Origin: Octopus sinensis
Lineage: Eukaryota
Assembly: GCF_006345805.1 (NCBI RefSeq)
Contig: NC_042997.1
Location: 116,312,001-116,376,000, forward strand
DNA length: 64,000 nt
Reading direction: 5' to 3'
Each line of letters starts with the position of its first letter. The first letter of the stretch is position 1. A model generated the notes under the pieces. The model was given only the letters and a program-made list of their open reading frames with translations. It made no database searches and was not told the origin of the DNA. A program made the translations under genes and the position numbers. This document shows, in pieces, positions 238-60,161 of this stretch.

Positions 238-350
238 CATTATTGTTCCGCCGGGGTTGAAATTCCTTTCATCCTTTCGGGGTCGATAAATTAAGTACCA
301 GTGAAACTGGTACTTAATCGACTAGTCCCCGCCACTCAAAATTTCAGGCC

Positions 351-4336: not shown

Positions 4337-6019
4337 CGTCGTGTGTGTGTAAAATAGTAGAGAGCAGCAGCAGTTAATTCAGTCTCTGCCATACTCTTCA
4401 ACCAAGTCCAAATATGGTTGTTTGTATTTCTGTAATTGTATTGCTAACACCTTAAACCATCAATAACTTACCGAACTGTTTTTTTCTTTTAATTACAAAC
4501 GATAGAATACTATTTAACTAATTTGTAATTAGTTTGTAGTAATGAACGTAATTAAAACGTAATAGACTCCCTGCAGGGTATGGCACACAATATATTGGCT
4601 GAGTGGTTAAAACGTTGAATAAAATGACCCAAGATATTTATTCCCGTTTACTGTGTTCTGAGTTCAAATCCCGCGTAGGTCAATTATTCCTTTTTATTCT
4701 GCAGGGTCTATTAAAAACGTACCGATCAAAGGTAATGCATTCGTGGAAGTCTAAGAACGTATGACACGTTGCCTGGTGGTGTCCTGAGTTCAAATTCCAC
4801 TGCAGCCTACTGAAATTTTCACTCGGTTTAACACCATCCCCTGGACACTTTTTCTTTGAGGGGGTGGGGGGTGACCTTAGTGATGTCCATCTCTACTTTG
4901 TTGCAACGATTTGGGCCAGGTCACTGATTAGAGGCTACTTTCGCTCCTCCCTCCCACCAGTCTCAGAAACCTGTAATGGTTTCCCTCCTGACTCAAAAGA
5001 TAAAATCGGAATAGCTTTGTGGTAAAAACCCTGGTATAAGCCTTAAAGTTGATTCAAAGAATTCGCGCCGATCATGCTTTAGTGAACCAATAGAGACATT
5101 TTACATGGTCACTCAATTCGCTGAATATAGCAGCCAAATCGACCTTAAATGATACCTTCGCGTAATGGTTCTCAATCTTTTTTTTATATCTGTGAGAGAT
5201 TTAAAACTTGGATTTTTTAGGCTGCCGCACCAGAATTGTAAAGCACAAGTCAATTAAGAAAATTTTATTATATTTATCATATTTATAGAGGGAATACTGC
5301 CGAGATCTTCCAAGAGCCGATGAGAGCTGCTGAAAGGATGCTTAAGGTCCAAAGCGGTTCTGGGAGACTCAGCTGAGAACCGCTACCTTGGCCTCTTGAT
5401 GAAATAAGGAAGGGTACAAGGGAAAATCTAGTGAAAGATATATAAAATAGTGGCATGGTCGTGACTAGTGCATATTTGATGAAAGGGTCTGCTTATTCAA
5501 GACTGATCTGGTGTTGGGGGAACGACACCAACAGAATTTAAATCCATGTCATTATCGTTGTAGGACTGACGGTTACACGGTATTCATGAACTGGCAGAAA
5601 CGTTAGCACGCCAGGCGAAATGCGTAGCCGTATTTCGTCTGCCGCACATGTGTTCGTGAAGTAAGAATTGCTGTTTCGTGGTGTTAATATTGTTAACAAC
5701 TGTTGTTTCTTGTTAAACTGTTGAATAACTTAACTGTTGGAGTTTTCAATTGAAAACACTTAGTGCTTGTGGTAGCACGCGTTGTTCATTCCCCCTTTGG
5801 GGGGAAGAATGTCGTCTAGCATGGAGCCTACCGTTGGAGCAGAAATACTTGTTTCTCCTGTTGAGAGGAGGAAATACATGTCCGGCGAGGAGCCAACTAC
5901 AGACAAGAAATAGGGGTTTCCCCCGCTACAAGAAGGAATAGCAGAGAGGATAATATATTTGATATTTTTGGAGATGTGTCTGAGAGCTCGTCAGAACTTT
6001 CACCAGAAGAGTTCCGACT

Positions 6020-7339
6020 TTGCCAGAGAACAAAGGCATTGTGTCGAAGAGAATAATTGATGTGCCTAGCATCCAGATAGAACCAAAAAATGGAAAAAAA
6101 AGTTTTGCGTTGGCTGCTGGGGGTGGAACCCAGATACTGTCGACGAATAAAAGCGAAATTATGAAATACAGCAAAATGATGGAAATAAATGACAACAGTG
6201 TGAAAATTGAACCTTCGCAAAAGTTATTACAGGAAGAAAAGAAAAACAAACAATAATTTTCAAAACATATTGTCTACAAAATAGAAAAATTGAAAGAATG
6301 TCAGAAGAGAAAATAGAAAAGTGCTTAAAGCCAATATTGGGCGACGTAGTATTTCTGAGAAGAGGAAAAAAATTCGGAACGGTGGAAGTAAGGTTCACCA
6401 ATAAAGAAATAGCACACAAGAACTCAGTGGAAACGTTGAAAACGAACGACGTGGAGTTAATACCCTATTATATGGGGATGAGGACGTCGCGAATAAAAAT
6501 TACAAGGGTCCCGCCAGAGGTCGAACCTATGTGGTTGTTGGCGGCAGTCCTAATCAAAGAGGTAGAAAAAATTACTCTCCTCCAGGCTACCGCTACGGAA
6601 AACCCACGCTGGGATGGTAAAACAATTAATCTTCTCATTCAAGCGGACCCTAAAATAATTCAAACAATTCCTGAGACAATTGAGGTAGGGGAGGAGAACC
6701 TCGTGGTGTGTTTGTTGAGGGCCGAAAACCTCGATGTTTTTTATGTGGTCAATTAGGCTACATTCGAAGGAACTGCAAGGAAAATGAAGAAGAGAGGAAG
6801 AGGAGAAAAAAGACAAAGAGGAAGAAGATAAAGAAGAAACAGATGAGAAAAAAACAACAAACAAAAGAAAAATACAACCAGCAACCCAGCCGAGAGCGGC
6901 GACTACTACAGAACAACGACCAAAAAAGACTGCCAGAAGAGAAAAAGAAGAAAAAGGCATAATAGCCGTATACACTAAATATACTGAGCTCATGAGAGAC
7001 ATTCAACTCATAAAGACTGTAAAAAAAATTGATAACCTTTCAGAGGAATTTATCAATTACGACATATATGAAGTCTCAAATAAGACTTATAGAATTCTAC
7101 AAAATAAGTACAGAAAGACTGTATCTTCATTGAGATTAGATTTTAACAAGTCGATATTTCATGGATTACCAGCTCCGATCCCGCGAGAAAAGGAAAAGGT
7201 GGAGATTCCCCCTCCACCTGATAATTCTGTGTCGGTGGTGAGACGGGATTTTGACAAATCTATTTCCCAAGACCGTCCACCTCCGACCCTGGATAAAAAA
7301 AAAGTGGAGGGTCCCCCTCCACCGGACAATCCTAATTAA
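6020..7339 (+). pseudogene. LINE ORF1 (RRM-like region, zinc knuckle, basic/Pro-rich tail), frameshifted
   Basis: Consecutive ORF-track pieces 6020-6256, 6298-6756, 6708-6962 and 6992-7339 lie in shifting frames. The knuckle reads CFLCGQLGYIRRNC (CX2CX4[H>Y]X4C). The true start codon is uncertain. Confidence 0.75.
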
Positions 7340-7347
7340 ACAGGTAA

Positions 7348-10300
7348 GTGATGGCTATTCACATTGGTTGTTTAAATGTTCATGGCCTGTTGTCAAGCTG
7401 GAAGCAAGGACGCTTTCTGAATGACATCAGGTCGAGAAATTTGGATGTATTGTTTGCAACGGAAACCCGGGTGAAGGGGCCAAGAGATCTGCTCCCCCTC
7501 CTGAACGGCTACGAGAAATACGTTTCTCCGAGTCGGGCGGGAGGTGGGGGTGGTGTTGGTCCTACTAAAAAGAAACCGGGTAGCCGAGAAAAAGTTGGTT
7601 TTTTTGACCCAGAAGGCAGGCTGGTCGTTCTCGACTTGACATTCAGTTGTGGCAAGACAATCAGGCTGGTCGCTATTTATGCACCAAACATTATTGGCCC
7701 GCAAACTGAATATTTTCGTGGCCTAGGAAAGTTCCTAGCCACGTCGCATTCACTAGTAGTGTTAGGAGACTCTAATACAATATGTGCAGCACACACAGAT
7801 TGTGTTGGCTCAAACTCGAACATGAACAGAAAATGTAACACAGGCTTTCGGGATCTGCTAAGTCAATTTCAGCTAGCAGATCCATATAGGTTGGAGCACC
7901 CGAACACTCCACAGTGGACGTGGTCAAATAGTGACGGGTCTACCAGAACATATCTAGATAGGATTTTAATTAGAGAAAAAGATAAGTCCATAGTTGAGTG
8001 TCCACAGTTTTTTCTAGTCAGCTACAGTGACCACAAGATGGTTACCTGTAAACTGACGGTAGATAAGTTGCATAGACAGGGATCTGGCTACTGGAAACTC
8101 AATACGTCCCTTTTGGCGATTGAGGAGTACAGAAAGCGGATCAAGATGTTAATACAGAGGGCATTAACAGGTACCATCATTAATAACAAATGGTGGTACG
8201 CCCTAAAAAGAGCCATCAAATATGAGTCTATTAGGTTTAGCATAAGTTTAGCTAAGAAGGGACGTAAAATAGGAGATGGTCTAGTTAAGGAACTAGAAGA
8301 AGCCTGGAGGACTGGTAATACAGACCAAGCGAGGGTGAAAAGACTGGAGTTAAACCAGCATCTTGAAGCCCACCACATGGGAAGTATTACCAGAGCTAAG
8401 TTACGTGCAATGGGAAGTGAAGGAATCAAAGCCGCTGGATGGGCCCGAGTGGTGGAAGCTCGGCAAGGAAATAGTTCCTCTATTCGGTCTTTGACGAATC
8501 AAAATGGTGTCTTGATAAACGAACCCGAGAAAATGTGTGAGGTCTTTCGGGAGTACTTCGCCCAGCTGTTCGGGGGTGACGGCGGTCCTGGTGGTGGGAG
8601 AGCCCTCGAGGACTTTCTTACTGGGCTGCCGTGCCTCTCGGGGTCGGATGCGGAGTCTTGCGAAGGGCCAATCACACTTGAGGAGGTGATGGAGGCTTTG
8701 GCCGATTGTAAAGCGGGTAAGTCACCGGGACTTGATGGTCTTCCGTACGAGCTGTATAAATGTATGCCAGACTTGTTCGGGCAACTACTGACTGACGTGT
8801 ACGCGAACTGGAAACAGATCTGTGCGCCGGGGAGTAGTGACGTTGGTCAGAAAGGACCCGGACAAGGGGGACGTTCTAGAGAATTTCAGGCCCATCACTC
8901 TGTTAAACGCAGAAGTGAAGATTTTGGCCAAGGTTCTAGCAAAAAGGTTGGCGCGTGTCGCGAATGGTATAGTCGGGGAGGCACAGACATGTGCCATCCC
9001 AGGCAGAACCATTCAGGATACCCTCCATCTTATTCGCTATACCATAGAGAGGTTTGGTAATAAATCTGGCAAAGGTGGGGCATTGGTGCATTTGGACCAG
9101 TCTAAAGCTTTTGATAGGGTTGACCATCGATACCTAGCGACTGTACTTGCGCGGTTTGGCCTGGGCCTTGGCTTCCTCAGGTGGTTTATCGCTTTGTACC
9201 ACAACATTGACTCGATAGTTCGGGTGAACGGTTTCCTTTCGAAGCCGTTCTGCATCAGACGCTCGGTTCGTCAAGGATGTCCGCTTTCACCACTTTTGTA
9301 TGTGATGGCTCTCGAGCCATTACTGCAAAGGTTGAGTGGCATCCCGAGAGAACCAGGACTAGAGGAGTTTGTTACGGCTTTCGCGGATGATATCACTATC
9401 AGTGTAACCACAGTGGTACGCCTACTATTGAGGCTTACGAGGAGGTAGCAGGAGCAAAGATTAACCGGGAAAAGTCGGTCGGCTTGCAGCTCGGCACCTG
9501 GGTTGGCAAGTCGATGCCTTCAGACAGTGTTGTTAGGCGCTGGACGGAGGGACCGGTTAAGTTGCTGGGAGTCTGGTTTGGACCAGGCCTCCAGATAGAG
9601 AAGAACTGGACGGAGGTATTGAGCAGGGTGGCTGCAGTAGTCAAGACTTGGTCTTGGCGGTGGCTATCCCTGAAAGGAGGGCGGAAGTGGCCAATGTGTT
9701 TATCGCATCGGTCATTACCTACCGCCTGACTGTCGTGCCCTGTCCGGATTCGTGGTTGATCAGGTTGGAGAGACAGCTCTTTCGCTTTTTGTGGAAGGGC
9801 AGGTCGCCACTTGTGAAACGCTCTGTCTGCTGTCAAAAGCCTTTAAATGGAGGTTTAGGGATGCCTTGGTTAATGATGCGCAGACATGCGTTGAGGTTGA
9901 GGCACCTCTGGATTCTCCTGGATAGTGAACGGGTGTGGTCTCCGCTGGCCAGACAAATGTTCCCTGAGTTCAAGAGTTTTTGCGAACAGGAAGCCTGGTG
10001 TTCTCGTAGACCGAGGTCGAGTGAGTGGCATAAAGAGTGCCGTAAGGCCCTCTTGCTGTTCCGGCGCTCGGGCAACGCCAGCGGTGGGGGTTCCACACGG
10101 ATTTTATATAGTGGGTTGGTAGAGTCTGAATGCGACGATGGCCTGGGGTCGACTCTAGGTCTCGGATTTATTCAACTGGACAGCTTGTTTCATCGTACAT
10201 TCGGGTTGAGAACGTTGGACAACTTCCAAAAGTCCTTAACCTGGCAATGCTACAGAGGTGCCTTGCCCGTTTGGGATAAGCTCGCAAGACATGGTAAACG

Positions 10301-10714
10301 TCAGTCGCCGACCTGTCCAAGATGCGGTGGGGACAGGGAAACCGTCCCTCACGCTATTGTTCAGTGTCCGGAGATAACTGAAATGTGGGCTTATGCTGAA
10401 CATCTGTTGTCCGGCGAAGGAAGAGTACGGCTGTCGACTGAGTCAATTATAAAAATTGACCCACCGGGAGTTCTAACGAACGAAGGTAAGAATTGTTTTC
10501 TCACGGTTGTAGCAATAGCAAAAGAGGCTGTATGGAATACTAGGATAAAAGGAATTAAGACAGGCAACTTTATCTCTGGTGACAATTTACGATCCTTTTT
10601 TCTTTTCATTTGAAAAGGAAACTGTGGCTGGAGAAGAGGTGTCTGTCAGAGTGTACGTTCCAAAAGAGATGGAAGTATGTTGCACGAGTGTTGTGCGTGC
10701 AAGGAACCGTGTGA
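7348..10714 (+). pseudogene. LINE ORF2: APE endonuclease + reverse transcriptase + C-terminal CCHC, about 4 frameshifts
   Basis: Endonuclease motifs CLNVHG, ATET, LGDSN, YLDRIL, SDHKMV. RT motifs FRPITLLNAEVKILAK, LDQSKAFDRVDH, RQGCPLSPLLY, FADD. Zinc motif CPRCGGDRETVPHAIVQC. Frame breaks near 8815, 9410, 9680 and 10605. The last frame reads FHLKRKLWLEKRCL...GTV* and ends at 10714. Confidence 0.92.
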
Positions 10715-11342
10715 ATAGACGAGGAAAAAAAAAAAAGGAAAAATAAAAAGGTATCAGCGGTAGATCGGGGCTTGTGGGATCGGAGCGTAACTTGATCATC
10801 GCTTCATTTGTATTGTTTTTGTACTGTGTATTCCATTCGATTTTTATGTATTGTATTTTACTTTTGATGTCACATTTATGTAAAATCATATCGATTCACT
10901 GATCCCATCAGTTGTACTGTCCATATCTATGTTTGGCCCCCGGTGGGCAATAAAGAAATTCGTATTTCGTCTGCCGTTACGTTCTGAGTTCGAATTCCGC
11001 TGAGGTCGACTTTGCCTTTCATCCTTTCGGGTTCGATGAAATAAGTACCAGTTACGCACTGGGGTCGATATAATCGACTTAATCCGTTTGTCTGACCTTG
11101 TTTGTCCCCTCTGTGTTTAGCCCCTTGTGGGTAGTAAAGAAATAGGTATTTCGTCTGCCGCAACGTTCTGAGTTCAAATTCCACCGAGGTCGACTATGCC
11201 TTTCATCCTTTAGGGGTCGATTAAATAAGTACCAGTTACGCACTGGGGTCGATATAATCGACTTAATCCGTTTGTCTATCCTTGTTTGTCCTCTCTGTGT
11301 TTAGCCCCTTGTGAGTAGTAAAGAAACAGGTATTCATGAACT

Positions 11343-11790
11343 GTAGAATGTGTATTTGTTTTTGTTTTCTATTTGCTGGGTTTGCAGGAAGGGCCTTCGT
11401 AGGCTTTTCTCGAGCAATGCAATTAATGTTTCTGGAACATTGGAACCATTGTTTTTAACACCTGCGGAAAAGACATGAGCAAGAAGAGAATTCCAGCGGG
11501 ACTACACTGTGGAGAGGAAGGACTGTGTGTAATAGTCAGCGTAGGACCGAGATGAAGGTGGTGGGCATAAAGAAAGTGATGAGAGGAAGAAAGACGAGTA
11601 GGGCAGGCTTGTTTGAGTGGAGGTGGCGTGAAATCATCCAGATTTGAGGAACAGAGGCCATTATAGTAGTGGTAGAAAAGCCTCAGAGAGGAGAAAGAGA
11701 GTCAGAAGCTGGGGTATATTTGTGAGTGATTTATGCCAAATCAGTCGATGGCCCTTTTCCTGTAAACGGTCTTAGACGTCTGGATATGCA
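11343..11790 (-). mobile_element. Old CR1/Jockey-group LINE 3' fragment (RT C-terminal region)
   Basis: The minus strand translates SLRLFYHYYNGLCSSNLDDFTPPPLKQACPTRLS, resembling the recalled CR1-group C-terminal motif LFYRYYNGxCSSEL. Confidence 0.6.
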
Positions 11791-28746: not shown

Positions 28747-28846
28747 NNNNNNNNNNNNNNNNNNNNNNNNNNNNNNNNNNNNNNNNNNNNNNNNNNNNNN
28801 NNNNNNNNNNNNNNNNNNNNNNNNNNNNNNNNNNNNNNNNNNNNNN
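28747..28846. other. Assembly gap (100 N)
   Basis: Run of N; the round size suggests a placeholder length. Confidence 0.99.
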
Positions 28847-28989
28847 TACGCTAAGTATTTCGCCCGGTGTGCTAACCTTTCTGGCAGCTCGCCGCCTTAA
28901 ACTATCTAACTCATCGCAGAATAAAAGTTAAACCGAAACTGTATGGGTTACAGTGGGTAAATTCCCGAGTAAGTAGTGTGCAATATTTA

Positions 28990-32691: not shown

Positions 32692-33078
32692 TAAGCACAA
32701 GGCCCGAAATTTTGGGGGAGGGGGCCAGTCGATAGATTGACCTCAGTGCGTAACTGGTACTTAGTTTATCGACCCCGAAAGGATGAAAGGTAAAGTCGAC
32801 TTCGGCAGGATTTCATCTTAGAATGTAAAGACAGACGAAATACCTATTTCTTTACTACCCACAAGGGGCTAAACACAGAGAGGACAAACAAGGACAGACA
32901 AACGGATTAAGTTGATTATATCGACCCCAGTGCGTAACTGATACTTAATTTATTGACCCTGAAATGATGAAAGGCAAAGTCGACCTCGGCGGAATTTGAA
33001 CTCAGAACGTAGCGGCAGACGAAATACCGCTAAGCATTCCGGCCGGTGTGCTAACGACTCTGCCAGCTCGTCACCTTA
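32692..33078 (-). mobile_element. Family-A SINE dimer: long-tail unit plus short-tail host
   Basis: Junction gacgaaatacc|tatttctttactaccc at 32844/32845. The last unit ends in the gcacaaggcc-type tail. Confidence 0.88.
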
Positions 33079-35092: not shown

Positions 35093-35230
35093 CAATATTC
35101 CCTCGACTATCGCGGGTGTTACGTTCCAAACCCTGCCCCGTGATAGGTGAAAATCTACGAAGTAGAAGTCCTGTCTTGTCCCTTTATGTAATCATGCGTG
35201 TCAGCCCTTGTGGCCAATAAAAAAGAATTG

Positions 35231-35280
<50 letters not shown>

Positions 35281-35282
35281 CA

Positions 35283-35323
<41 letters not shown>

Positions 35324-37132: not shown

Positions 37133-37714
37133 AGGTTTCAAATTTTGGCACAAGGCCAGCAATTTTGGGGGAAGGAGCTAAGTCGATTAGATCGACCCCA
37201 GGGCTTGACTGGTCTTATTTTATCGAACCACGAAAGGATGAGAGGCAAAGTCGACCTCGGTGAGGTTTGAACTTAGAACGTAAAGACGGACGAAATACCT
37301 ATTTCTTTACTACCCACAAGGGGCTAAACACAGAGAGGACAAACAATGACAGACAAACGGATTAAGTCGATTACATCGACCCCAGTGCGTAACTGGTACT
37401 TATTTTATCGACCCCGAAAGGATGAAAGGCAAAGTCAACCTCGGCGGAATTTGAACTCACAACGTAACAGCAGACGAAATGCCTATTTCTTTACTACCCA
37501 CAAGGGGCTAAACACAGAGAGGACAAACAATGACAGACAAACGGATTAAGTCGACTATATCGACCCCAGTGCGTAACTGGTACTTATTTAATCGAGCCCG
37601 AGAAGATGAAAGGCAAAGTCGGCCTCGGCTGAATTTGAACTCAGAACGTAACGGCAGACGAAATACCGCAAAGCACTTCGTCCAGCGTGCTAACGTTTTT
37701 GCCAGCTCGCTGCC
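37133..37714 (-). mobile_element. Family-A SINE trimer: two long-tail units plus short-tail host
   Basis: Junctions at 37299/37300 and 37483/37484, both at the GG(T/C)ATTTCGTC site. Confidence 0.88.
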
Positions 37715-37739
37715 TTACACGTACACACATATACACGCA

Positions 37740-39312: not shown

Positions 39313-39712
39313 GACGGCGAGCTGGCAGACACGTTAGCGCGCCGGGTGAAATGCTTAGCGGTATTTCGTCTGCCGTTACGTTGTGAGTTCAAATTCCGCC
39401 GAGGTCGACTTTGCCTTTCATCCTTTCGGGCTCGATAAATTAAGTACCAGTTACGCACTGGGGTCGATGTAATCGACTTAATACCTATGTCTGTCCTTGT
39501 TTGTCCCCTCAATGTTTAGCCCCTTGTGGGTAATAAAGAAATAGGTATTTCGCCTGCCGATACGTTCTGAATTCAAATTCCGCCGTGTTTGACTTTGCCT
39601 TTCATCCTTTCGGAGTCGATAAAATAAGTACCAGTTAGTATTGGGATCGATGTAATCGACTCGCATCCTCCCGCGAAATTTCAGGCCGTGTGCCTTTATT
39701 AGAAGGGGGTTT
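39313..39712 (+). mobile_element. Family-A SINE dimer: long-tail unit plus short-tail host
   Basis: Junction aataaagaaata|ggtatttcgcctgccg at 39543/39544. The second unit ends aaatttcaggccgtgtgcc. Confidence 0.88.
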
Positions 39713-40847: not shown

Positions 40848-41071
40848 TATTTCTTTATTACCCACAAGGGGCTAAACATAGAGGGGACAAACAAGGACAG
40901 ACATAGGTATTAAGTCGATTACATCGACCCCAGTGCATAACTGGTACTTAATTTATCGACCCCGAAAGGATGAAAGGCAAAGTCGACCTCGGCGGAATTT
41001 GAACTCACAACGTAACGCAGACGAAATACCGCTAAGCATTTCGCCCGGCGTGCTAACGTGTCTGCCAGCTC
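40848..41071 (-). mobile_element. Family-A long-tail SINE inserted into the head of a family-D SINE
   Basis: It interrupts the family-D head (ggcgcaatggcccagtgg...). tacc (GGTA on the element strand) is duplicated at 40844-40847 and 41072-41075. Confidence 0.8.
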
Positions 41072-41871: not shown

Positions 41872-42516
41872 CTTTTATTCTTTTACTTGTTTCAGTCATT
41901 TGACTACGGCCATGCTGGAGCACTGCCTTTTTTAGTTGAGCAAATCGACCCCAGGACTTATTCTTTGTAAGCCTAGTACTTATTCTATCTGTCTATTTTG
42001 CTGAACCGCTAAGTTACGGGGACATAAACACACCAGCATCGGTTGTCAAGCGATGTTAGGGGAGAAACACAGACACACAGACACACACACATATATATAT
42101 TTCTTTATTGCCCACAAGGGGCTAAACATAGAGGGGACAAACAAAGACAGACAAACGGATTAAGTCGATTACATCAACTCCAGTGCGTAACTGGTACTTT
42201 ATTTATCGACCCCGAAAGGATGAAAGGCAAAGTCGACCTCGGTGGAATTTGAACTCAGAACGTAACGGCAGACAAAATACGGCTGCGCATTTCGCTCGGC
42301 GTGCTAACGTTTCTGCCAGCTCGCCGCCTTAACACACACACACACACACACACACACATATGTATATATATATATACATATATACGACGGGTTTCTTTCA
42401 GTTTCCGTCTACCAAATCTACTCACAACGCTTTGGTCGGCCCGTGACATGCAGTGGGACTGAAACCGGAACCATGTGGTTGGTAAGCAAGCTATTTACCA
42501 CACAGCCACTCCTGCG
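41872..42516 (-). mobile_element. Family-B SINE interrupted by a family-A SINE
   Basis: Tail half 41872-42085 and head half 42385-42516. Confidence 0.8.
42097..42330 (-). mobile_element. Family-A long-tail SINE inserted in the microsatellite middle of a family-B SINE
   Basis: Complete unit; both flanks are (CA)n-CATAT. Confidence 0.85.
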
Positions 42517-45692: not shown

Positions 45693-46198
45693 GTATTACC
45701 TTCGGCAATGAACATATCGTCTTCCTTATTATCGGTTGTATGGTGCTCTTTTTCATGGTGTGTCTTCCAATTGACTTCTACAACTACCACAAAAAGCGAA
45801 AAGATAAAAAGGATCGACAAGGGTCCAGTATGGTTTACTCTCGAACAGGTCCCAGGCCATTTCATGTAATTGTCAACCAAGAATCAAACACGGAAGAGGC
45901 GCACCAAACGCGACACACGAAAACACGACGTCCCTTTTTCAAGTTTATGGGTCTCGTGGCGCTGCTTAAAAAGAAGCCGACTTCAGGCGACGATCAAGTC
46001 GACAGTATTGTGGACGACGGAGTAACACCATCAACATCAACGAAGTCGATGAGTGTGTCGACGATGTATTGTAACAGTGTAGGACTATCTGCTGATTCGA
46101 TGAGTCCAGCGGAACATATCGAACTGCCAGAGTTACCGTACGACAACGCAAGGAAACCGAAAGAACTTTATAATTTTGTGGACGAAGAAAATTCTTGA
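45693..46198 (+). CDS. Terminal coding exon of a probable single-pass (type I) membrane protein: TM helix, basic stop-transfer, about 135-aa cytoplasmic tail
   Basis: Strong acceptor ttacttttctttttcttcgcag at 45692 (phase 1). The frame reads (G)ITFGNEH-IVFLIIGCMVLFFMVCLPIDFY-NYHKKRKDKK...ELYNFVDEENS*. High-complexity, repeat-free sequence followed by a long AT-rich UTR-like tract. Upstream exons not identified. Confidence 0.72.
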
Positions 46199-48686: not shown

Positions 48687-49501
48687 TGTAGTTGAGGCTT
48701 CCGGCAGGCGAAGAAAAAAGTCTTCAAGTACAACTGCTATTTACAACTGATTTATTTACAGGAAAAGGTGAAGTGTGCTGCTCTCAGCTACCATCTTAAG
48801 CACCGATAGTGTGGGCGCATTGCCTCTGGAGATAGACAGGCAGAAAAGCTCTGCCAGTGGTGGTGATCAGCCATTGCTGCTGAGTAGTGGCGCCGAAGAA
48901 GAGAGGTCTGAATCGGTTTACCCTTTATATAGTTTTTTTTTTCCATCGCGAGCCTCGTTGTGATCTCATGCATGGCAAATGGATGCAGGTGAGGTCTCGC
49001 TCCTGTCGCGGTCAATTCAACTCCGGACGTGGGCTGGTGAATTACTTCGCTGCCCATTTGTCCAGCAAGATCCGTCTGGAGAAGAGGAGCCTGCAGCAAA
49101 GAGGCTTTTCGAAAAAGATGGACGACAGTGGTAAGAAAGATGAGAATGTACGAGGCTGTGCTTGCACGGTCGTTCGGAATATAAAAGAAAGGAAAAAGAT
49201 TACCAAAAAGGGATAACCAACCGGCGGGTTAACTCACTAACCCGGACCCAAAACTCATCCGATCATCATCTACATTTATATTTTTAACCCTCATTCACAA
49301 TATATGTAAACCCATCCGGTTTTTCACACTGTATGTAAGAAGCGAGTTTGTACCTTGAATGTCCCTTGTCTGTCCTTGTAATGTCCCCTCTATGTAAAAC
49401 CCTTATAGGTTAATAAAGAAATATCTCGCTCTAGTTTCGGAGATGGCAATGGCTGCCGCGAGATCTCATCCAATATGGCGCTGGCTGCTTGTGCCGCTAC
49501 A
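48687..49501 (-). mobile_element. Putative solo LTR, interrupted by copy A
   Basis: TGTAG...CTACA termini. On the minus strand, CTATATAAA (48932-48924) precedes AATAAA (48756-48751). About 390 bp without the insert. No TSD, PBS or PPT found. Confidence 0.35.
49003..49423 (+). mobile_element. 421-bp Tx1-derived 3' element, copy A
   Basis: Encodes NYFAAHLSSKIRLEKRSL, similar to the LINE ORF2 end FHLKRKLWLEKRCL. Tail ..aataaagaaata. 8-bp TSD tctcgctc at 48995-49002 and 49424-49431. Confidence 0.82.
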
Positions 49502-50579: not shown

Positions 50580-51000
50580 TATTTCTTTATTTGCCTATAA
50601 AAAGGTTTACATAGAGGGGACATTACAAGGACGGACAAGGGACATTTAGGGTACAAACACGCTTGTTATATACACTATAAAAAAAAACGAATGGATTTAC
50701 ATATATTTTGCGGATGGGAGTTAAAAATATAAATGATGGTTAGATGAAATTTGGGTCCGGGTTAGTGAATTAACCCGCCGGTTGGTTATCCCTATTGGTA
50801 ATCTTTTTCCTTTCTTTTATGCTCTGACCGACCGTGCAAGCACAGCCTCGTGCATTCTCATCTTTCTTACCACTGTCGTCCATCTTTTTCGAAAATCCTC
50901 TTTGCAGCAGGCTCCTCTTTTCCAGACGGATCTTGCTGGATAGATGGGCAGCGAAGTAATTCACCAGCCCACGTCCGGAGATGAATTGACTTGTCGCAAT
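50580..51000 (-). mobile_element. 421-bp Tx1-derived 3' element, copy B (inverted relative to A)
   Basis: Reverse-complement homolog of 49003-49423. 17-bp TSD ctagggatcaacagaga at 50563-50579 and 51001-51017. Confidence 0.88.
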
Positions 51001-51395: not shown

Positions 51396-51812
51396 TATTT
51401 CTTTATTGCTCACAAGGGGCTAAACATAGAGGGGACAAATAAGAACAGACAAACGGACCAAGCCGATTACATCGACTTCAATGCGTAACTGGTACTTAAT
51501 TTATCGACCCCGAAAGGATGAAAGGCAAAGTCGACCTCGGCGGAATTTGAACTCAGAACGTAACGGCAGACAAAATACTTATTTCTTTACTACCCACATG
51601 GGGCTAAACACAGAGAAGACAAACAAGGACAGACATAGGTATTAAGTCGATTACATCGACCCCAGTGCGTAACTGGTACTTAATTTATCGACCCCGAAAG
51701 GATGAAAGGCAAAGTCGACCTCGGCGGAATTTGAACTCAGAACGTAGCGGCAGACGAAATACCGATAAGAATTTCGCCCGGCGTGCTAACGCTTCTGCCA
51801 GCTCGCCGCCTA
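51396..51812 (-). mobile_element. Family-A long-tail SINE dimer with 14-bp TSD
   Basis: aataaaacgatata at 51382-51395 and 51813-51826. Internal junction at the standard site near 51579. Confidence 0.9.
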
Positions 51813-52724
51813 AATAAAACGATATACGGAAGGAAAGTGGTTTACTTTGGTATAAGTGTGAGAAGTTGACAAGGGAAAGCACTCAGAAGAGAAAAAGTCT
51901 AAGACCAATGAAGACATACGAAGTGTGTTGTTTGGCTTTTCTTTGATTTAACTTTGCAGCACACCTAATACATCTTCACCAATAAAACCAAACTGACAAC
52001 ACGAATGAGACAAGCAGACGGTATGTTTTGATTAAATTTTTAGTTACACGAGACATCTTACAAACAAGGGTGAGAAATAAATAGTCATGATGTGACTGTT
52101 GTAGTTCGACTACTTGTCCTTGTTTTATTAGAACAAATACATAAACCGAAACAGATTCATATAATTATTATATTGCATAAAACAATTAGACATAGCGCCT
52201 GAATGTCTGTTTGCCTTCACCAACAAACCTATTCACTATCTAGTTCACTATTCTACTGTTTATTTAAGAGAACTTTGACTTTCTTCATAACTTGAATATA
52301 TTCGTTAAGGTCTCTCTATTGCCATTAGATAATTAAGGTATCTTAAAGTGACTTTATTATAAGTAAAAGCATTCTTTAAAAAATGTATTGTGACAATATT
52401 GAAATTCATCTTTCTTATTATTTTTTATAATATTGTGTGAGGCACTCGTCTGAATAATTCCATGAGATGAAAAGCGTTAACAACGATATAGAAAATGAAT
52501 GAGTTATTTAATGGGCTATTGTAGAGGGTGGTCTAAAAGTTTTGTTACTCACTACTAGAAAGTAATGAGAGCAATAGAAAAACAAGTAATGCAGTATCCC
52601 AAAGCACGAACTGGGTTTAGTTTATTCACTTTCATTGACGCTGTCACATTTGTATGAACACCGTCATTTTCGTGGCACATAATAATGCAGCACCATGTTC
52701 TGTGTGATATTTTTCGAAGACGGA

Positions 52725-53400
52725 GAGCTGACAGAAACGTTAGAACGCCGGGCGAAATGCTAATACGGTATTTCGCCTGTTTTTGCGTTCTGAGTTCAAA
52801 TTCCGCCGAGGTCGACTTTGCCTTTCATCCTTTCGGGGTCGATAAATTAAGCACCAGTTACGCACTAGGGTCGATATAATCGACTTAATCCATTTGTCTG
52901 TCCTTGTTTGTCCTCTCTGTGTTTAGCCCCTTGTGGGTAGTAAAGAAATAGGTATTTCGTCTGTCTTTACGTAGTGAGTTCAAATTCCTCTGAGGTCGAC
53001 TTTGCCTTTCATCCTTTTCGGATCGATTAAATAAGTACCAGTTACATACTGGAGTCGATATAATCGACTTAATCCGTTTGTCTGTCCTTGTTTGTCCTCT
53101 CTGTGTGTAGCCCCTTTTGGGCAGTAAAGAAAAAAGAAACGTTAGCACGCCGGGCAAAATGCTTAGCGATATTTCGTCTGTCTTTACATTCTGAGTTCAA
53201 ATTCCGCCGAGGTCGACTTTGCCTTTCATCCTTTCGGGGTTGATTAAATAAGTACTAGTTACACACTGGGATCGATATAATCAACTTAATCCGTTTGTCT
53301 GTCCTTGTTTGTCCCCTCTGTGTGCAGTAAAGAAATAAGAAACGTTTGTATGCCGGGCGAAATTCTTAGCGATATTTCGTCTGTCTTTGCAAAATGTTTG
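52725..53400 (+). mobile_element. Family-A SINE array: three tailed units plus a terminal partial head, inside a Tc1/mariner remnant
   Basis: Junctions at 52951 (ggtatttcg site) and at 53135 and 53338 (agaaacg site). Confidence 0.85.
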
Positions 53401-58917: not shown

Positions 58918-60161
58918 TAGGGTGCGTAAGATATTTGAGGACAGATTTATGTTTAAAAAAAATATATATAATACCAGATAATAACTTTATTTATCAAAAA
59001 TGCTATAAAGGATAAAAATAAACCTTCTTTTCTATAATGTTATTCAATAAAGCCACCTTCAGCTTCAACAATTGCTTCTGTATGAGATCTAAATCATCTA
59101 CATGCTCGAATCAAGTGGTCCTGGTTCATTTTGGACATTACTCTGACTATGGTAGCTTTCAAAGAATCTTTGGTGTTATGGGGATGTTCATTGGCCTCTC
59201 TTTCAACAACACTCCATATGTAATAGTCCAATGGATTGAGATATGGGGAATTAGGAGGCCAAATGTTAGGGGTTATGTGATCATGAGAATTTTCAGTCAT
59301 CCATTCCTGTGCTACTAGAGCCATGTGTAATAGTGCAGAATCTTACTGAAACACATCTGGTCTTCCATTGCATACACTGTCTATCCAGGGCTTAACAATT
59401 ATTTCCAGGACCTCAATGTAGCAATGTAGGCAGCAGAGTTAACTCTAAGGCCTTGTGGAAAGAAGTAAGGAGGCATCACATGTCCTTCATTGCTGACACC
59501 CCTAAAACCATGACAGATGCAGGAAATTTTGTATGCATAACACTTGGAACTTCAGAAGGGTCTGCACATAACCATCTATCATTTCTTCTGTTAACTTTTT
59601 GATCTTGGTCAAAGTTTTTCTCGCTTGAGAAAAACCAAATCAAATCTTCTGCTGGATTTTTCAATTAGTTTAAGAGCCTTTTAGATCTGATGTAGTGATT
59701 TTCTTTTTCTGACAAATTGACCTTCCCCTCATCATATAAGACTTATATCTGATGTCTTCGTAGACAACATTTCTGACTGTTCTTTCTGACACATGGAGAT
59801 CTTTTGCAATTGACCTCATGGACTTTCTGGGATTGTAATCAATGGTCTGTTGAACTTTATGGATAAATTCAGATATTCTGATGATTTCAGAGTGTTTAGA
59901 ATGCTTTGATACTGGTGATATGTTTCCATCTTCAGTCTCTAGTTCCTTACAAACTTTGTAGACAGAAGATTTGGCAAATTGAGATATTTCTAAATCTCTT
60001 TGCTGAGCCTTTATAACCACATTAACAGCATGTCTCTTCATTTCTTGAGTAAGTTGAGTGTCTGCCATTATTACTTTCTGAAACAAAGATTATACAGAGT
60101 TGGCAAAAAGTGCAGCAATGACCCCAAAAAAGGTATGTCCTCAAATACCTTATGCACCCTG
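58918..60161 (-). mobile_element. Near-complete DD37D (maT-type) Tc1/mariner element, inactive
   Basis: About 26-bp TIRs (tagggtgcgtaagatatttgaggaca / tgtcctcaaataccttatgcaccctg) with TA flanks. HTH IAKDLHVSERTVRNVV and FFSSEKNFDQDQKVNRRNDRW. Exactly 37 residues lie between the D of Q*DSA and the D of PLDY. Stops and frameshifts are present. Confidence 0.88.

What the first reader, a model, noticed from the sequence alone, without database searches (positions are those of the whole stretch)
5579..11342. Tx1-clade LINE inserted into the head of the SINE it appears to mobilise
Seen: the 5.3-kb LINE splits a family-A SINE between its A and B boxes, with a perfect 16-bp TSD (cgtatttcgtctgccg). 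Seen: the LINE's terminal 34 nt (tctatgtttggcccccggtgggcaataaagaaat) match the long SINE tail (tctatgtttagccccttgtgggcaataaagaaat, e.g. the minus strand at about 42100-42133) with 3 mismatches. Established: SINEs commonly borrow the 3' end of their partner LINE, and the Tx1 clade includes target-specific families (Tx1L into Tx1D, Keno into U2, Mutsu into 5S). Inference: here the non-autonomous passenger is also the target, so every SINE copy made creates a new landing site for the LINE. I do not recall this loop being described, but I cannot search.
Basis: partly seen in the sequence, partly recalled or inferred. Interest (0 to 1): 0.9.

Follow-up and report, generated by a model that had tools for sequence, protein, structure and literature searches.

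The report
LINE nested in its partner SINE
A dead 5.3-kb octopus LINE sits, with a clean 16-bp target duplication, at the one spot in a tRNA-derived SINE where seven SINE copies carrying the LINE's own 3' tail have also landed within this 64-kb window. The pair therefore seems to prefer a landing site inside the SINE it spreads, which is a new twist on known target-specific LINE/SINE pairs.

Summary
A 5,315-bp LINE (5645-10959) splits a SINE between its A and B boxes. It is flanked by a perfect 16-bp duplication, CGTATTTCGTCTGCCG (5629-5644 and 10961-10976). Its last 34 nt match the long SINE tail at 31 positions.

The LINE encodes APE, RT and a C-terminal zinc domain, and it has at least 3 frameshifts. 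Its best solved relative is human L1 ORF2p, so it belongs to the L1/Tx1 group. Tx1 itself could not be tested because no reference sequences were available.

The new evidence concerns the landing site. Of 15 elements in the window that carry this tail, 8 abut SINE position 50 in sense orientation (the LINE plus 7 SINE units). None of 11 SINEs with other tails does. Six composite loci have six different compositions. All 13 exact GGTATTTCG motifs in the window lie in SINEs. Non-SINE targets also start with GGTAT-like sequence.

This supports a shared, sequence-preferring integration site inside the SINE, but a preference rather than strict specificity. For the LINE itself n = 1, and no other copies could be retrieved.

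The closest precedent is Tx1-Mar/SINEU in a crocodilian Mariner (Kojima 2015). I rate it a new variant of a known kind, of moderate interest.

The parts
5579..5593 (+). Left copy of the outer 15-bp TSD, GGTATTCATGAACTG, of the original SINE insertion
   Evidence: Read. The identical copy at 11329-11343 was read.
5594..5644 (+). SINE head, positions about 15-65, with an A-box-like motif. Its last 16 nt (5629-5644) form the left copy of the inner TSD, CGTATTTCGTCTGCCG.
   Evidence: blastn against the reference SINE: 9-65 aligns to 5588-5644 at 91%. Sequence read.
5645..10960 (+). L1/Tx1-group LINE of 5.3 kb. It has no poly(A) and ends in ...GGCCCCCGGTGGGCAATAAAGAAAT(T).
   Evidence: It is the only copy in the window. 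Domains, PDB comparison.
6298..6962 (+). ORF1 remnant in two overlapping frames. It contains a decayed CCHC-like knuckle, CFLCGQLGYIRRNC.
   Evidence: ORF list. No Pfam hit, so the motif is read by eye only.
7348..10613 (+). ORF2 remnant. The APE domain is about 7414-8034 (residues 23-229 of the 7348-9060 ORF). The RT hit is about 8867-9412 (residues 16-197 of the ORF at 8822-9448). zf-RVT is about 10230-10388 (residues 195-247 of the 9648-10613 ORF). Frames change near 8830-8860, 9410-9440 and 9690-9700.
   Evidence: Pfam PF03372 5.8e-07, PF00078 1.7e-25, PF13966 2.2e-08. Frames.
10926..10959 (+). LINE 3' tail shared with the SINE. It includes the hairpin GCCC[CCGGT]GGGC followed by AATAAAGAAAT.
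   Evidence: similarity; hairpin, one CG<->GC covarying pair.
10961..10976 (+). Right copy of the inner 16-bp TSD, corresponding to SINE positions 50-65
10961..11144 (+). SINE unit 1, positions 50-231, long (LINE-type) tail of the TAGT subtype
   Evidence: blastn 91%. Alignment.
11145..11328 (+). SINE unit 2, positions 50-231. It starts again at the same site, directly after the tail of unit 1.
   Evidence: blastn 90%..
11329..11343 (+). Right copy of the outer TSD, GGTATTCATGAACTG
32727..33077 (-). Comparison locus B: a full long-tail SINE followed at position 50 by a short-tail SINE unit
37179..37716 (-). Comparison locus C: three units with two junctions at position 50. The whole is flanked by the 16-bp TSD TATATGTGTGTACGTG.
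39315..39661 (+). Comparison locus D: a young long-tail SINE (98.4% identical to the monomer at 40850-41071) followed at position 50 by an older short-tail unit
51398..51811 (-). Comparison locus E: two long-tail units of different subfamilies joined at position 50. The outer TSD is TATATCGTTTTATT.
52717..53383 (+). Comparison locus F: one junction at position 50, then two junctions at SINE position 17

Best explanation
The focal structure is a nested retrotransposon pile. A tRNA-derived SINE with a conserved central domain first inserted at GGTATTCATGAACTG. Elements carrying one particular 3' tail then integrated repeatedly at a single site inside it. That site is the junction of SINE positions 49/50, at the start of (C/G)GTATTTCGTCTGCCG, between the A and B boxes.

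The LINE is an APE + RT + zinc-domain element of the L1/Tx1 group. It has no poly(A) and ends in a small hairpin plus AAUAAAGAAAU. It is the autonomous source of the machinery.

Inferred mechanism: the LINE's endonuclease nicks the bottom strand at 49/50 and the top strand 16 nt downstream. Reverse transcription is primed on any RNA that ends in the LINE-type tail, whether the LINE's own RNA or the long-tail SINE's.

- When the incoming RNA is the LINE, its 5' end has no homology to the target. A classical 16-bp TSD results, and this is shown here.
- When the incoming RNA is a SINE, its cDNA is homologous to the target's head. The 5' junction is resolved by homology (inferred). Only one head remains, followed by 'body-tail' units that each restart at position 50.

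Recognition is a preference for a GGTAT(T)TCG-like sequence, not an absolute requirement. In this window the SINE is the only carrier of the exact 9-mer. Each insertion also duplicates the site, so SINE amplification supplies further landing sites (inferred).
For: Insertion and partnership:
- The perfect 16-bp TSD around the LINE and the outer TSD around the whole composite are shown.
- The shared 3' tail has a local alignment score of 51 against 16.8 +/- 2.4 for shuffles.
- The same tail motif and hairpin occur in related LINEs and SINEs of Argonauta and in a JGI contig, with one compensatory CG<->GC pair.

Shared landing site:
- Fifteen elements carry this tail. Eight abut SINE position 50 in sense orientation (1 LINE + 7 SINE), two abut position 17, and five lie in other DNA.
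- With at most about 25 such sites among 128,000 position/orientation slots, the single LINE event has p of about 2e-4, and 8 of 15 has p of about 1e-26.
- 0 of 11 SINEs with other tails are followed by a position-50 junction, against 7 of 14 long-tail SINEs (Fisher p = 0.008).

Against a single dimer master or RT stops:
- Six composite loci have six different compositions. The last units have short tails of at least two types or long tails. The inserted units belong to at least two subfamilies that also occur as monomers.
- In locus D the inserted unit is 98.4% identical to a monomer. By my eye count (no tool call), the unit it interrupts is about 12% diverged from the long-tail consensus.
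- No unit that begins at position 50 is preceded by unique DNA, so there is no sign of plain truncation at that point.

Target sequence:
- Non-SINE TSDs start with GGTATTCATG, GGTATAAG or GGTAATTTC, or with TATATCGT or TATATATG. Three of five start with GG (p = 5e-4 to 2e-3).
- Argonauta relatives are followed by CTATTT-like targets, with the TSD CTATTTCAAGGAA.
- All 13 exact GGTATTTCG motifs in the window lie in SINE units.

Precedent:
- Tx1-Mar and SINEU share a 16-bp-TSD target in a Mariner element, and tandem SINEU-3 arises by sequential insertion (PMC4494074).
Against: - There is only one LINE copy of this family in the window. None could be retrieved elsewhere, so LINE-level specificity is n = 1.
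- The eight events may not all be independent if some composites were themselves retrotransposed as units.
- The simple 'seamless TSD' picture is not fully met. The left and right site copies differ in several loci, for example GCCG versus GTCT in locus B. In locus D the head resembles the incoming subfamily rather than the interrupted unit.
- In the focal locus the head carries C at position 50, while unit 2 carries G there.
- The nick positions and the homology-based 5' resolution are inferred, not shown.
- Whether specificity lies in the endonuclease or in pairing between the RNA 3' end and the target is unknown.
- One third of the tail-bearing elements lie outside SINEs.
Confidence: 0.68

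Rival explanations
1. Short-motif or RNA-pairing preference only. The machinery has no dedicated recognition of the SINE. It nicks or primes at any GGTAT/TATTT-like sequence. Alternatively, read-through RNAs ending in ...AAAUAGGUAUUU pair with such targets. The SINE is hit often simply because it is the most abundant carrier of that motif.
For: - Five of 15 tail-bearing elements lie in non-SINE DNA whose TSDs start with GGTAT-, GGCAT-, GGTAA- or TATAT-like sequence.
- Argonauta relatives sit next to CTATTT-like targets outside any SINE.
- A related family sits in (ATT)n microsatellites.
- Two further junctions use a different SINE position (17), where the target AGAAACG can pair with the tail AAAGAAA.
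Against: - One-mismatch variants of the 9-mer are common outside SINEs: 17 one-mismatch matches, roughly half of them outside SINE units. None of those is occupied.
- 8 of 15 events fall at one position, which implies a recognition sequence much longer than 5 nt.
- Non-SINE targets resemble the SINE site over 8-10 nt, for example CGTATATCGT versus CGTATTTCGT.
Confidence: 0.2
2. The SINE-SINE junctions are template-jump chimeras. Reverse transcriptase copying a SINE RNA stops at a fixed point near position 50, for example at a tRNA-type base modification or a processed RNA 5' end. It then jumps to the 3' end of another RNA. On this view the LINE's position is a coincidence or part of such a chimera.
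For: - End-to-end template jumping is a known property of non-LTR reverse transcriptases (my own knowledge).
- Position 50 corresponds roughly to tRNA position 26/27 of the degenerate tRNA-like head, by my own alignment by eye.
- In loci C and D the head looks like the same type as the first unit.
- Every composite has one outer TSD.
Against: - The LINE is flanked by a 16-nt overlap (positions 50-65 on both sides). This is what staggered nicks give, and it is not expected from a jump.
- The upstream partner is always an element with the LINE-type tail. It is never one of the short-tail SINEs, which are nearly as frequent in this window (11 versus 14), even when the downstream unit has a short tail.
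- No simple 5'-truncated copy starting at position 50 is flanked by unique DNA.
- The units of locus D differ about ten-fold in divergence (and reading).
- The junction bases are nearly constant (ATA|GG).
Confidence: 0.07
3. Chance plus composite masters. The LINE inserts at random and happened to land in one of the many SINEs. The tandem units reflect one or a few dimeric SINE master genes, or unequal recombination.
For: - SINEs make up about 11.6% of an octopus genome (PMC13282606), so a random LINE often lands in one.
- Tandem SINE arrays formed by recombination between TSDs have been proposed in bivalves (PMC11481361).
- Five of the seven nested SINE units share one tail subtype (TAGT).
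Against: - Landing at the exact nucleotide and orientation defined independently by seven other junctions has p of about 2e-4.
- Six loci have six compositions, with last units from different families.
- Units within a locus belong to different subfamilies, so they are not local duplications.
- The repeat boundary is internal to the SINE, not at its TSD.
Confidence: 0.05

Closest known systems
Tx1-Mar LINEs and SINEU SINEs targeting Mariner-N4_AMi in crocodilians (Kojima 2015, PMC4494074)
   Same: - An APE-type L1/Tx1-group LINE and a non-autonomous partner share a preferred integration position and orientation inside an abundant interspersed repeat.
- The TSD is 16 bp.
- Tandem SINE copies arise by sequential insertion at the same site.
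- The preference is graded, from 13% to 90% of copies depending on the family.
   Different: - There the target is an unrelated DNA transposon. Here it lies inside the partner SINE (and sister SINE families with the same head), so the machinery makes its own targets.
- SINEU shares its target with its LINE, and some Tx1-Mar families also share its U1/U2 head. Here the sharing is a 3' tail of about 34 nt.
- Tx1 membership was shown there by phylogeny. It is not shown here.
Tx1L into Tx1D (Xenopus), and Keno (U2), Mutsu (5S), Kibi/Koshi (microsatellites): target-specific Tx1-clade families
   Same: - Sequence-specific integration into multicopy targets by an APE-bearing LINE.
- A relative in this window and in contig L002 sits in (ATT)n, reminiscent of the microsatellite-specific families.
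   Different: - Those targets are host genes, microsatellites or a DNA transposon, not the LINE's own SINE.
- Their specificity is documented from many copies. Here there is one LINE copy plus seven SINE copies.
L1/Alu nesting in A-rich tails (my own knowledge, not checked in a paper here)
   Same: Each new insertion brings sequence that the LINE endonuclease likes, so elements accumulate inside one another.
   Different: - The L1 endonuclease recognises a very short, degenerate TTTT/AA motif, and the tail is low-complexity sequence.
- Here the site is a unique 9-16-nt sequence inside the tRNA-related promoter region, used in one orientation at single-nucleotide precision.
Stringent LINE/SINE pairs that share a 3' stem-loop, e.g. 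eel UnaL2/UnaSINE1 (Kajikawa and Okada 2002, cited in PMC4494074)
   Same: - The SINE tail is copied from the LINE 3' end.
- A small conserved hairpin is followed by a short fixed 3' sequence.
- There is no poly(A).
   Different: - No target preference is described for that pair, as far as I know (my own knowledge, not checked in a paper here).
- Recognition of the tail is experimentally proven there. Here it is inferred from sequence only.
ingi/RIME of Trypanosoma brucei, a LINE apparently flanked by two halves of a short element (my own knowledge)
   Same: Superficial anatomy: short-element head, then a long coding element, then the short-element remainder.
   Different: RIME is a deletion derivative of ingi, with no TSD at the internal junctions. 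Here the internal junctions carry a 16-bp TSD, and the LINE shares only its last ~34 nt with the SINE.

Membership tests
L1/Tx1-group non-LTR retrotransposon | N-terminal APE-type endonuclease followed by an RT in one ORF2 | tested here: met
   PF03372 5.8e-07 and PF00078 1.7e-25 in successive ORF2 pieces.
L1/Tx1-group non-LTR retrotransposon | RT closer to L1-type than to other solved LINE RTs, plus a C-terminal Cys/His zinc domain | tested here: met
   Human L1 ORF2p scores E 1.2e-53 over residues 6-857, against 5.9e-17 for R2. zf-RVT PF13966 scores 2.2e-08. The motif reads CPRCGGDRETVPHAIVQC.
Tx1 clade specifically | RT phylogeny places the element with Tx1, Keno, Kibi and similar families rather than with L1 proper | not testable with these tools
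   No Tx1 or L1 reference sequences were obtainable, and none of the listed homologues has an informative name. Indirect support only: in the O. vulgaris table of recently active insertions, L1-Tx1 is the only L1-like LINE class listed (PMC13282606).
Tx1 clade specifically | ORF1 of the RRM / zf-CCHC kind (Ivancevic 2016, PMC5203782) | tested here: inconclusive
   A decayed knuckle, CX2CX4YX4C, can be read at 6708-6962. There is no Pfam hit even at E = 10.
Tx1 clade specifically | Target-sequence preference of the LINE copies | tested here: inconclusive
   There is one LINE copy, at a site shared with 7 tail-sharing SINE units. No further LINE copies could be retrieved.
Stringent LINE-SINE partnership | The SINE 3' tail is homologous to the LINE 3' end | tested here: met
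   30/33 identity, E 1.5e-7. The score is far above shuffles.
Stringent LINE-SINE partnership | A conserved 3' structure that the RT could recognise | tested here: inconclusive
   A 4-bp hairpin is paired in 89% of cells. One pair switches CG<->GC (8 versus 7 sequences). The slid controls score much lower. The helix is short and the switch is probably a single evolutionary event.
Stringent LINE-SINE partnership | Mobilisation of the SINE by the LINE protein | not testable with these tools
   This needs a retrotransposition assay.
tRNA-derived SINE (SINE2) | Internal Pol III A and B boxes in a tRNA-like head | tested here: inconclusive
   TGGCAGAAACG fits TRGYNNANNNG, and GAGTTCAAATTCC is close to GGTTCGANNCC (read). 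ARAGORN and the Rfam tRNA model find no tRNA in the heads.
Target-specific LINE/SINE pair of the Tx1-Mar/SINEU kind | LINE and SINE copies occupy the same position and orientation of a repeated target | tested here: met
   Within the window, 1 LINE and 7 SINE units are at SINE position 50 in sense orientation.
Target-specific LINE/SINE pair of the Tx1-Mar/SINEU kind | A large fraction of all genomic copies lies in the target | not testable with these tools
   No octopus genome is reachable. The window gives 8 of 15 (53%).

The most novel reading that the evidence does not exclude
A self-feeding LINE/SINE pair. The LINE's integration machinery recognises a 10-16-nt sequence in the anticodon-arm remnant of the SINE family it mobilises. 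Genome-wide, a large share (roughly a third or more) of new SINE and LINE copies then nest into older SINEs at one nucleotide position. Every insertion duplicates the site. This would build the SINE clusters that dominate octopus genomes and would give the LINE a harmless, ever-growing safe harbour of its own making.
Probability: 0.45. Interest if true: 0.7.

Novelty: new variant of a known kind. Interest (0 to 1): 0.55.

Why it matters
Target-specific LINEs are thought to survive by landing in harmless multicopy sequence. Here the multicopy sequence would be produced by the LINE's own machinery. That creates a positive feedback between SINE amplification and safe landing sites, which I did not find described in the literature I could search.

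It would also explain why, in this window, the long-tail (LINE-tailed) SINEs occur as 'head + several bodies' arrays. That matters for repeat annotation. The O. vulgaris table of recently active insertions lists 893 'unclassified SINE' families (PMC13282606), and nested composites could inflate that number.

An APE endonuclease with a 10-16-bp preference would also be of interest for targeted integration.

The evidence comes from one 64-kb window and one LINE copy, so the claim is a well-founded lead and not yet a result.

Tried and rejected
Attempts to find more LINE copies, all without result:
- The protein search with the APE + RT-N piece gave only 4 distant hits.
- The RT search gave 60-67% relatives at best: Argonauta hians and two JGI metagenome contigs. 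No copy of this family is in the protein collection.
- The search for related loci on metagenome contigs with the ORF2 C-terminus found nothing.
- A tail pattern in viral contigs gave 35 chance hits with no SINE.
- The SINE core pattern in metagenome contigs gave 3 hits. Two (L040, L041) carry short stretches resembling the SINE's central domain, with no octopus SINE or LINE. The third (L039) is probably a chance match.
- The ENA relatives at about 47% identity come from a genome without this SINE.

Attempt to get orthologous loci for empty-site tests:
- The ORF at 45740-46198 is a real conserved gene. Its 97% match has no contig on record, and the other orthologues are too distant.

Ideas considered and dropped:
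- A single dimeric master SINE, because there are six different compositions.
- Local tandem duplication, because units within a locus belong to different subfamilies.
- An RT stop at position 50, because no such truncated monomers exist and the upstream partner is always LINE-tailed.
- A RIME/ingi-type deletion derivative, because a TSD is present.
- Assigning heads to 'old' or 'new' units by subfamily. This was tried and is inconclusive with so few copies.


Full report
WHAT IS THERE

The window is octopod DNA. An ORF at 45740-46198 is 97% identical to a database protein (P0125). It is 68% identical to an Argonauta hians protein named after Octopus bimaculoides LOC106884431. The window is dense in SINEs of about 231 bp with a conserved central domain.

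Reading the focal region gives this order:
- outer TSD GGTATTCATGAACTG (5579-5593);
- SINE head, positions about 15-65 (5594-5644);
- LINE (5645-10959, plus one T);
- SINE positions 50-231 (10961-11144);
- SINE positions 50-231 again (11145-11328);
- outer TSD again (11329-11343).

The 16 nt CGTATTTCGTCTGCCG flank the LINE on both sides (5629-5644 and 10961-10976). They match 16/16, and the neighbouring bases differ.

The LINE's last 33 nt match the SINE tail in 30 positions (E 1.5e-7 in the window). The alignment score is 51 against 16.8 +/- 2.4 for shuffles.

THE LINE

ORF2 is broken into at least four frame pieces. These carry Exo_endo_phos (APE), RVT_1 and zf-RVT. A joined conceptual translation, used only for searching, matches human L1 ORF2p over residues 6-857 at E 1.2e-53. 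R2 proteins reach only about 6e-17.

The element has no poly(A). ORF1 shows only a decayed CCHC-like knuckle and has no Pfam hit. This places the element in the L1/Tx1 group.

I could not separate Tx1 from L1 proper, because no reference sequences were reachable and none of the listed homologues has an informative name. Indirectly, the O. vulgaris table of recently active insertions lists 'L1-Tx1' as the only L1-like LINE class (PMC13282606). RRM/CCHC-type ORF1s are also described as typical of Tx1-like elements (PMC5203782).

The closest proteins are from Argonauta hians (60%) and two JGI metagenome contigs (64-67%).

Their 3' ends carry the same motif, a small hairpin followed by AAUAAAGAAAU, as do Argonauta SINE-like elements. 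In a 17-sequence alignment the 4-bp helix is paired in 89% of cells. One pair switches between CG and GC (8 versus 7 sequences), and the slid controls fall to 14-63% paired. The SINE tail is therefore plausibly the recognition element of this LINE lineage, as in stringent LINE/SINE pairs.

THE KEY EXTRA OBSERVATION

The site used by the LINE is not used only once. I listed every element in the window that ends in the LINE-type tail and every SINE unit. There are 15 tail-bearing elements, 14 SINE units and the LINE:
- Eight are followed directly by SINE position 50, (G/C)GTATTTCG..., in the same orientation. These are the LINE, unit 1 of the focal locus, and units in loci B (33077-32727), C (37716-37179, two junctions), D (39315-39661), E (51811-51398) and F (52717-53132).
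- Two more in locus F are followed by SINE position 17.
- Five lie in non-SINE DNA.

None of 11 SINE copies with other ('short') tails is followed by such a junction (Fisher p = 0.008).

With at most about 25 such sites among 128,000 position/orientation slots, one random hit has p of about 2e-4. Eight of 15 has p of about 1e-26, and even three independent events give about 3e-9. All 13 exact GGTATTTCG motifs in the window lie in SINE units.

WHICH PROCESS MAKES THE JUNCTIONS

A single dimeric master SINE is unlikely. The six composite loci have six different compositions:
- long tail + short tail of type TTTCGGGCC;
- two long tails + short tail of type TTGCTGGCC;
- long tail + short tail of type TTTCAGGCC;
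- two long tails of different subfamilies;
- long tails with position-17 junctions;
- LINE + two long tails.

The inserted units fall into at least two subfamilies that also occur as monomers.

Local duplication is excluded because units within a locus belong to different subfamilies.

A fixed reverse-transcription stop with a template jump is disfavoured for four reasons:
- The LINE is flanked by a 16-nt overlap, as staggered nicks produce.
- The upstream partner always carries the LINE-type tail, even when the downstream unit has a different tail.
- No unit starting at position 50 is flanked by unique DNA.
- In locus D the upstream unit is 98.4% identical to a monomer. By my eye count (no tool call), the downstream unit is about 12% diverged from the long-tail consensus. 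That indicates two events of different age.

The best reading is repeated target-primed insertion at one site by the machinery that recognises this tail.

The 5' junctions of SINE-into-SINE events show no duplicated head. I infer that the cDNA, being homologous to the target head, is joined by homology. This step is not shown, and the details are untidy. The left and right site copies differ in several loci. In locus D the head resembles the incoming subfamily (it shares CAGACACG with monomer H). In the focal locus the head has C at position 50, whereas unit 2 has G.

HOW SPECIFIC IS IT

The preference is not absolute. The five non-SINE targets begin with GGTATTCATG (a perfect 15-bp TSD), GGTATAAG, GGTAATTTC, TATATCGT and TATATATG. 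Three of five start with GG (p = 5e-4 to 2e-3), and some match the SINE site over 8-10 nt.

Argonauta relatives are followed by CTAT(T/A)... and show a clear TSD, CTATTTCAAGGAA. A related family sits in (ATT)n both in the window (35181-35225) and in contig L002.

The lineage therefore has sequence-preferring integration, with the SINE site as the best match in this genome. Whether recognition lies in the endonuclease or in pairing of a read-through RNA 3' end with the nicked target is open.

COMPARISON WITH WHAT IS KNOWN

Tx1 inserts into Tx1D, Keno into U2 genes, and Kibi/Koshi into microsatellites (PMC4494074 introduction). Mutsu inserts into 5S genes (PMC5340908, listed).

The closest precedent is in the same paper. 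Crocodilian Tx1-Mar LINEs and SINEU SINEs share a preferred position in the abundant transposon Mariner-N4_AMi. The TSD is 16 bp. Between 13% and 90% of SINE copies lie in the target. Tandem SINEU-3 copies are explained by sequential insertion. Tandem SINE arrays in bivalves have been ascribed to recombination between TSDs (PMC11481361), which does not fit an internal boundary.

In six of the seven literature searches I found no report of a LINE/SINE pair whose preferred target lies in the SINE itself. I also found no report of position-specific SINE nesting in octopus. L1/Alu nesting in A-rich tails (my own knowledge) is a weak analogue of the same feedback.

VERDICT

The Tx1 clade is untested, the specificity is a preference, and the 'loop' is an inference.

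This is a new variant of a known kind (target-preferring L1/Tx1-group LINE with a SINE partner). I rate interest at 0.55. The decisive test is a genome-wide census of LINE and SINE 3' flanks in an octopus assembly, which these tools could not reach.

Noticed in passing
window 35181-35320; L002 1995-2105; window 246-340 and 415-590: A related LINE/SINE tail (…GCCCTTGTGGCCAATAAAAAAG) abuts an (ATT)n microsatellite. A JGI metagenome contig with a LINE 64% identical in protein shows the same arrangement. Two short-tail SINE copies are also embedded in (ATT)n. These may be microsatellite-targeting relatives.
   Followed up: partly
window 28747-28898: A 100-N scaffold gap begins inside a SINE head exactly at the hot site (…TTAGCGTA|NNN on the minus strand). 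The assembly may have broken at a nested insertion.
   Followed up: partly
window 53117-53383: Two junctions join the long tail directly to SINE position 17 (AAAGAAA(A/T)|AAGAAACG). This is a second, minor landing site where the target can pair with the tail. The last unit has an internal deletion and a short tail.
   Followed up: partly
window 49011-49421 and 50582-50990: Inverted repeat with arms of about 410 bp (94% in the outer 200 nt), 1.16 kb apart. The inner ends carry the same …AATAAAGAAAT tail followed by ATCTC. This is a third family using this tail, and its identity is unknown.
   Followed up: partly
window 45740-46198 (+): A conserved host ORF of 152 aa. It is 97% identical to a 170-aa database protein and 68% identical to an Argonauta hians protein named after O. 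bimaculoides LOC106884431. It has no Pfam domain.
   Followed up: partly
window 7131-7228 and 7239-7333: An internal ~100-bp tandem duplication (71% identity) in the proline-rich stretch between ORF1 and the APE domain of the LINE.
   Followed up: no
window 59670-60086 (-): An ORF with weak helix-turn-helix transposase similarity (HTH_Tnp_Tc3_2 and others, all below threshold). It is probably a Tc1/mariner remnant.
   Followed up: no
L001 8280-11060 (Argonauta hians): Argonauta LINE fragments and SINE-like elements end in the same hairpin + A(A/G)AGAAAT tail. Four of five are followed by CTAT…, and one has the clear TSD CTATTTCAAGGAA. The tail and a TATTT-like target preference are therefore older than the genus Octopus.
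   Followed up: partly
L040 1786-1824; L041 6537-6580: The SINE's central domain (GTCGACTTTGCCTTTCATCCTTTCG.GGTCGATAAA) occurs in two unrelated metagenome contigs, in L041 just downstream of a GGTTCGACTCC B-box-like motif. This fits a widely conserved SINE core domain (Deu-like, according to octopus repeat papers).
   Followed up: no
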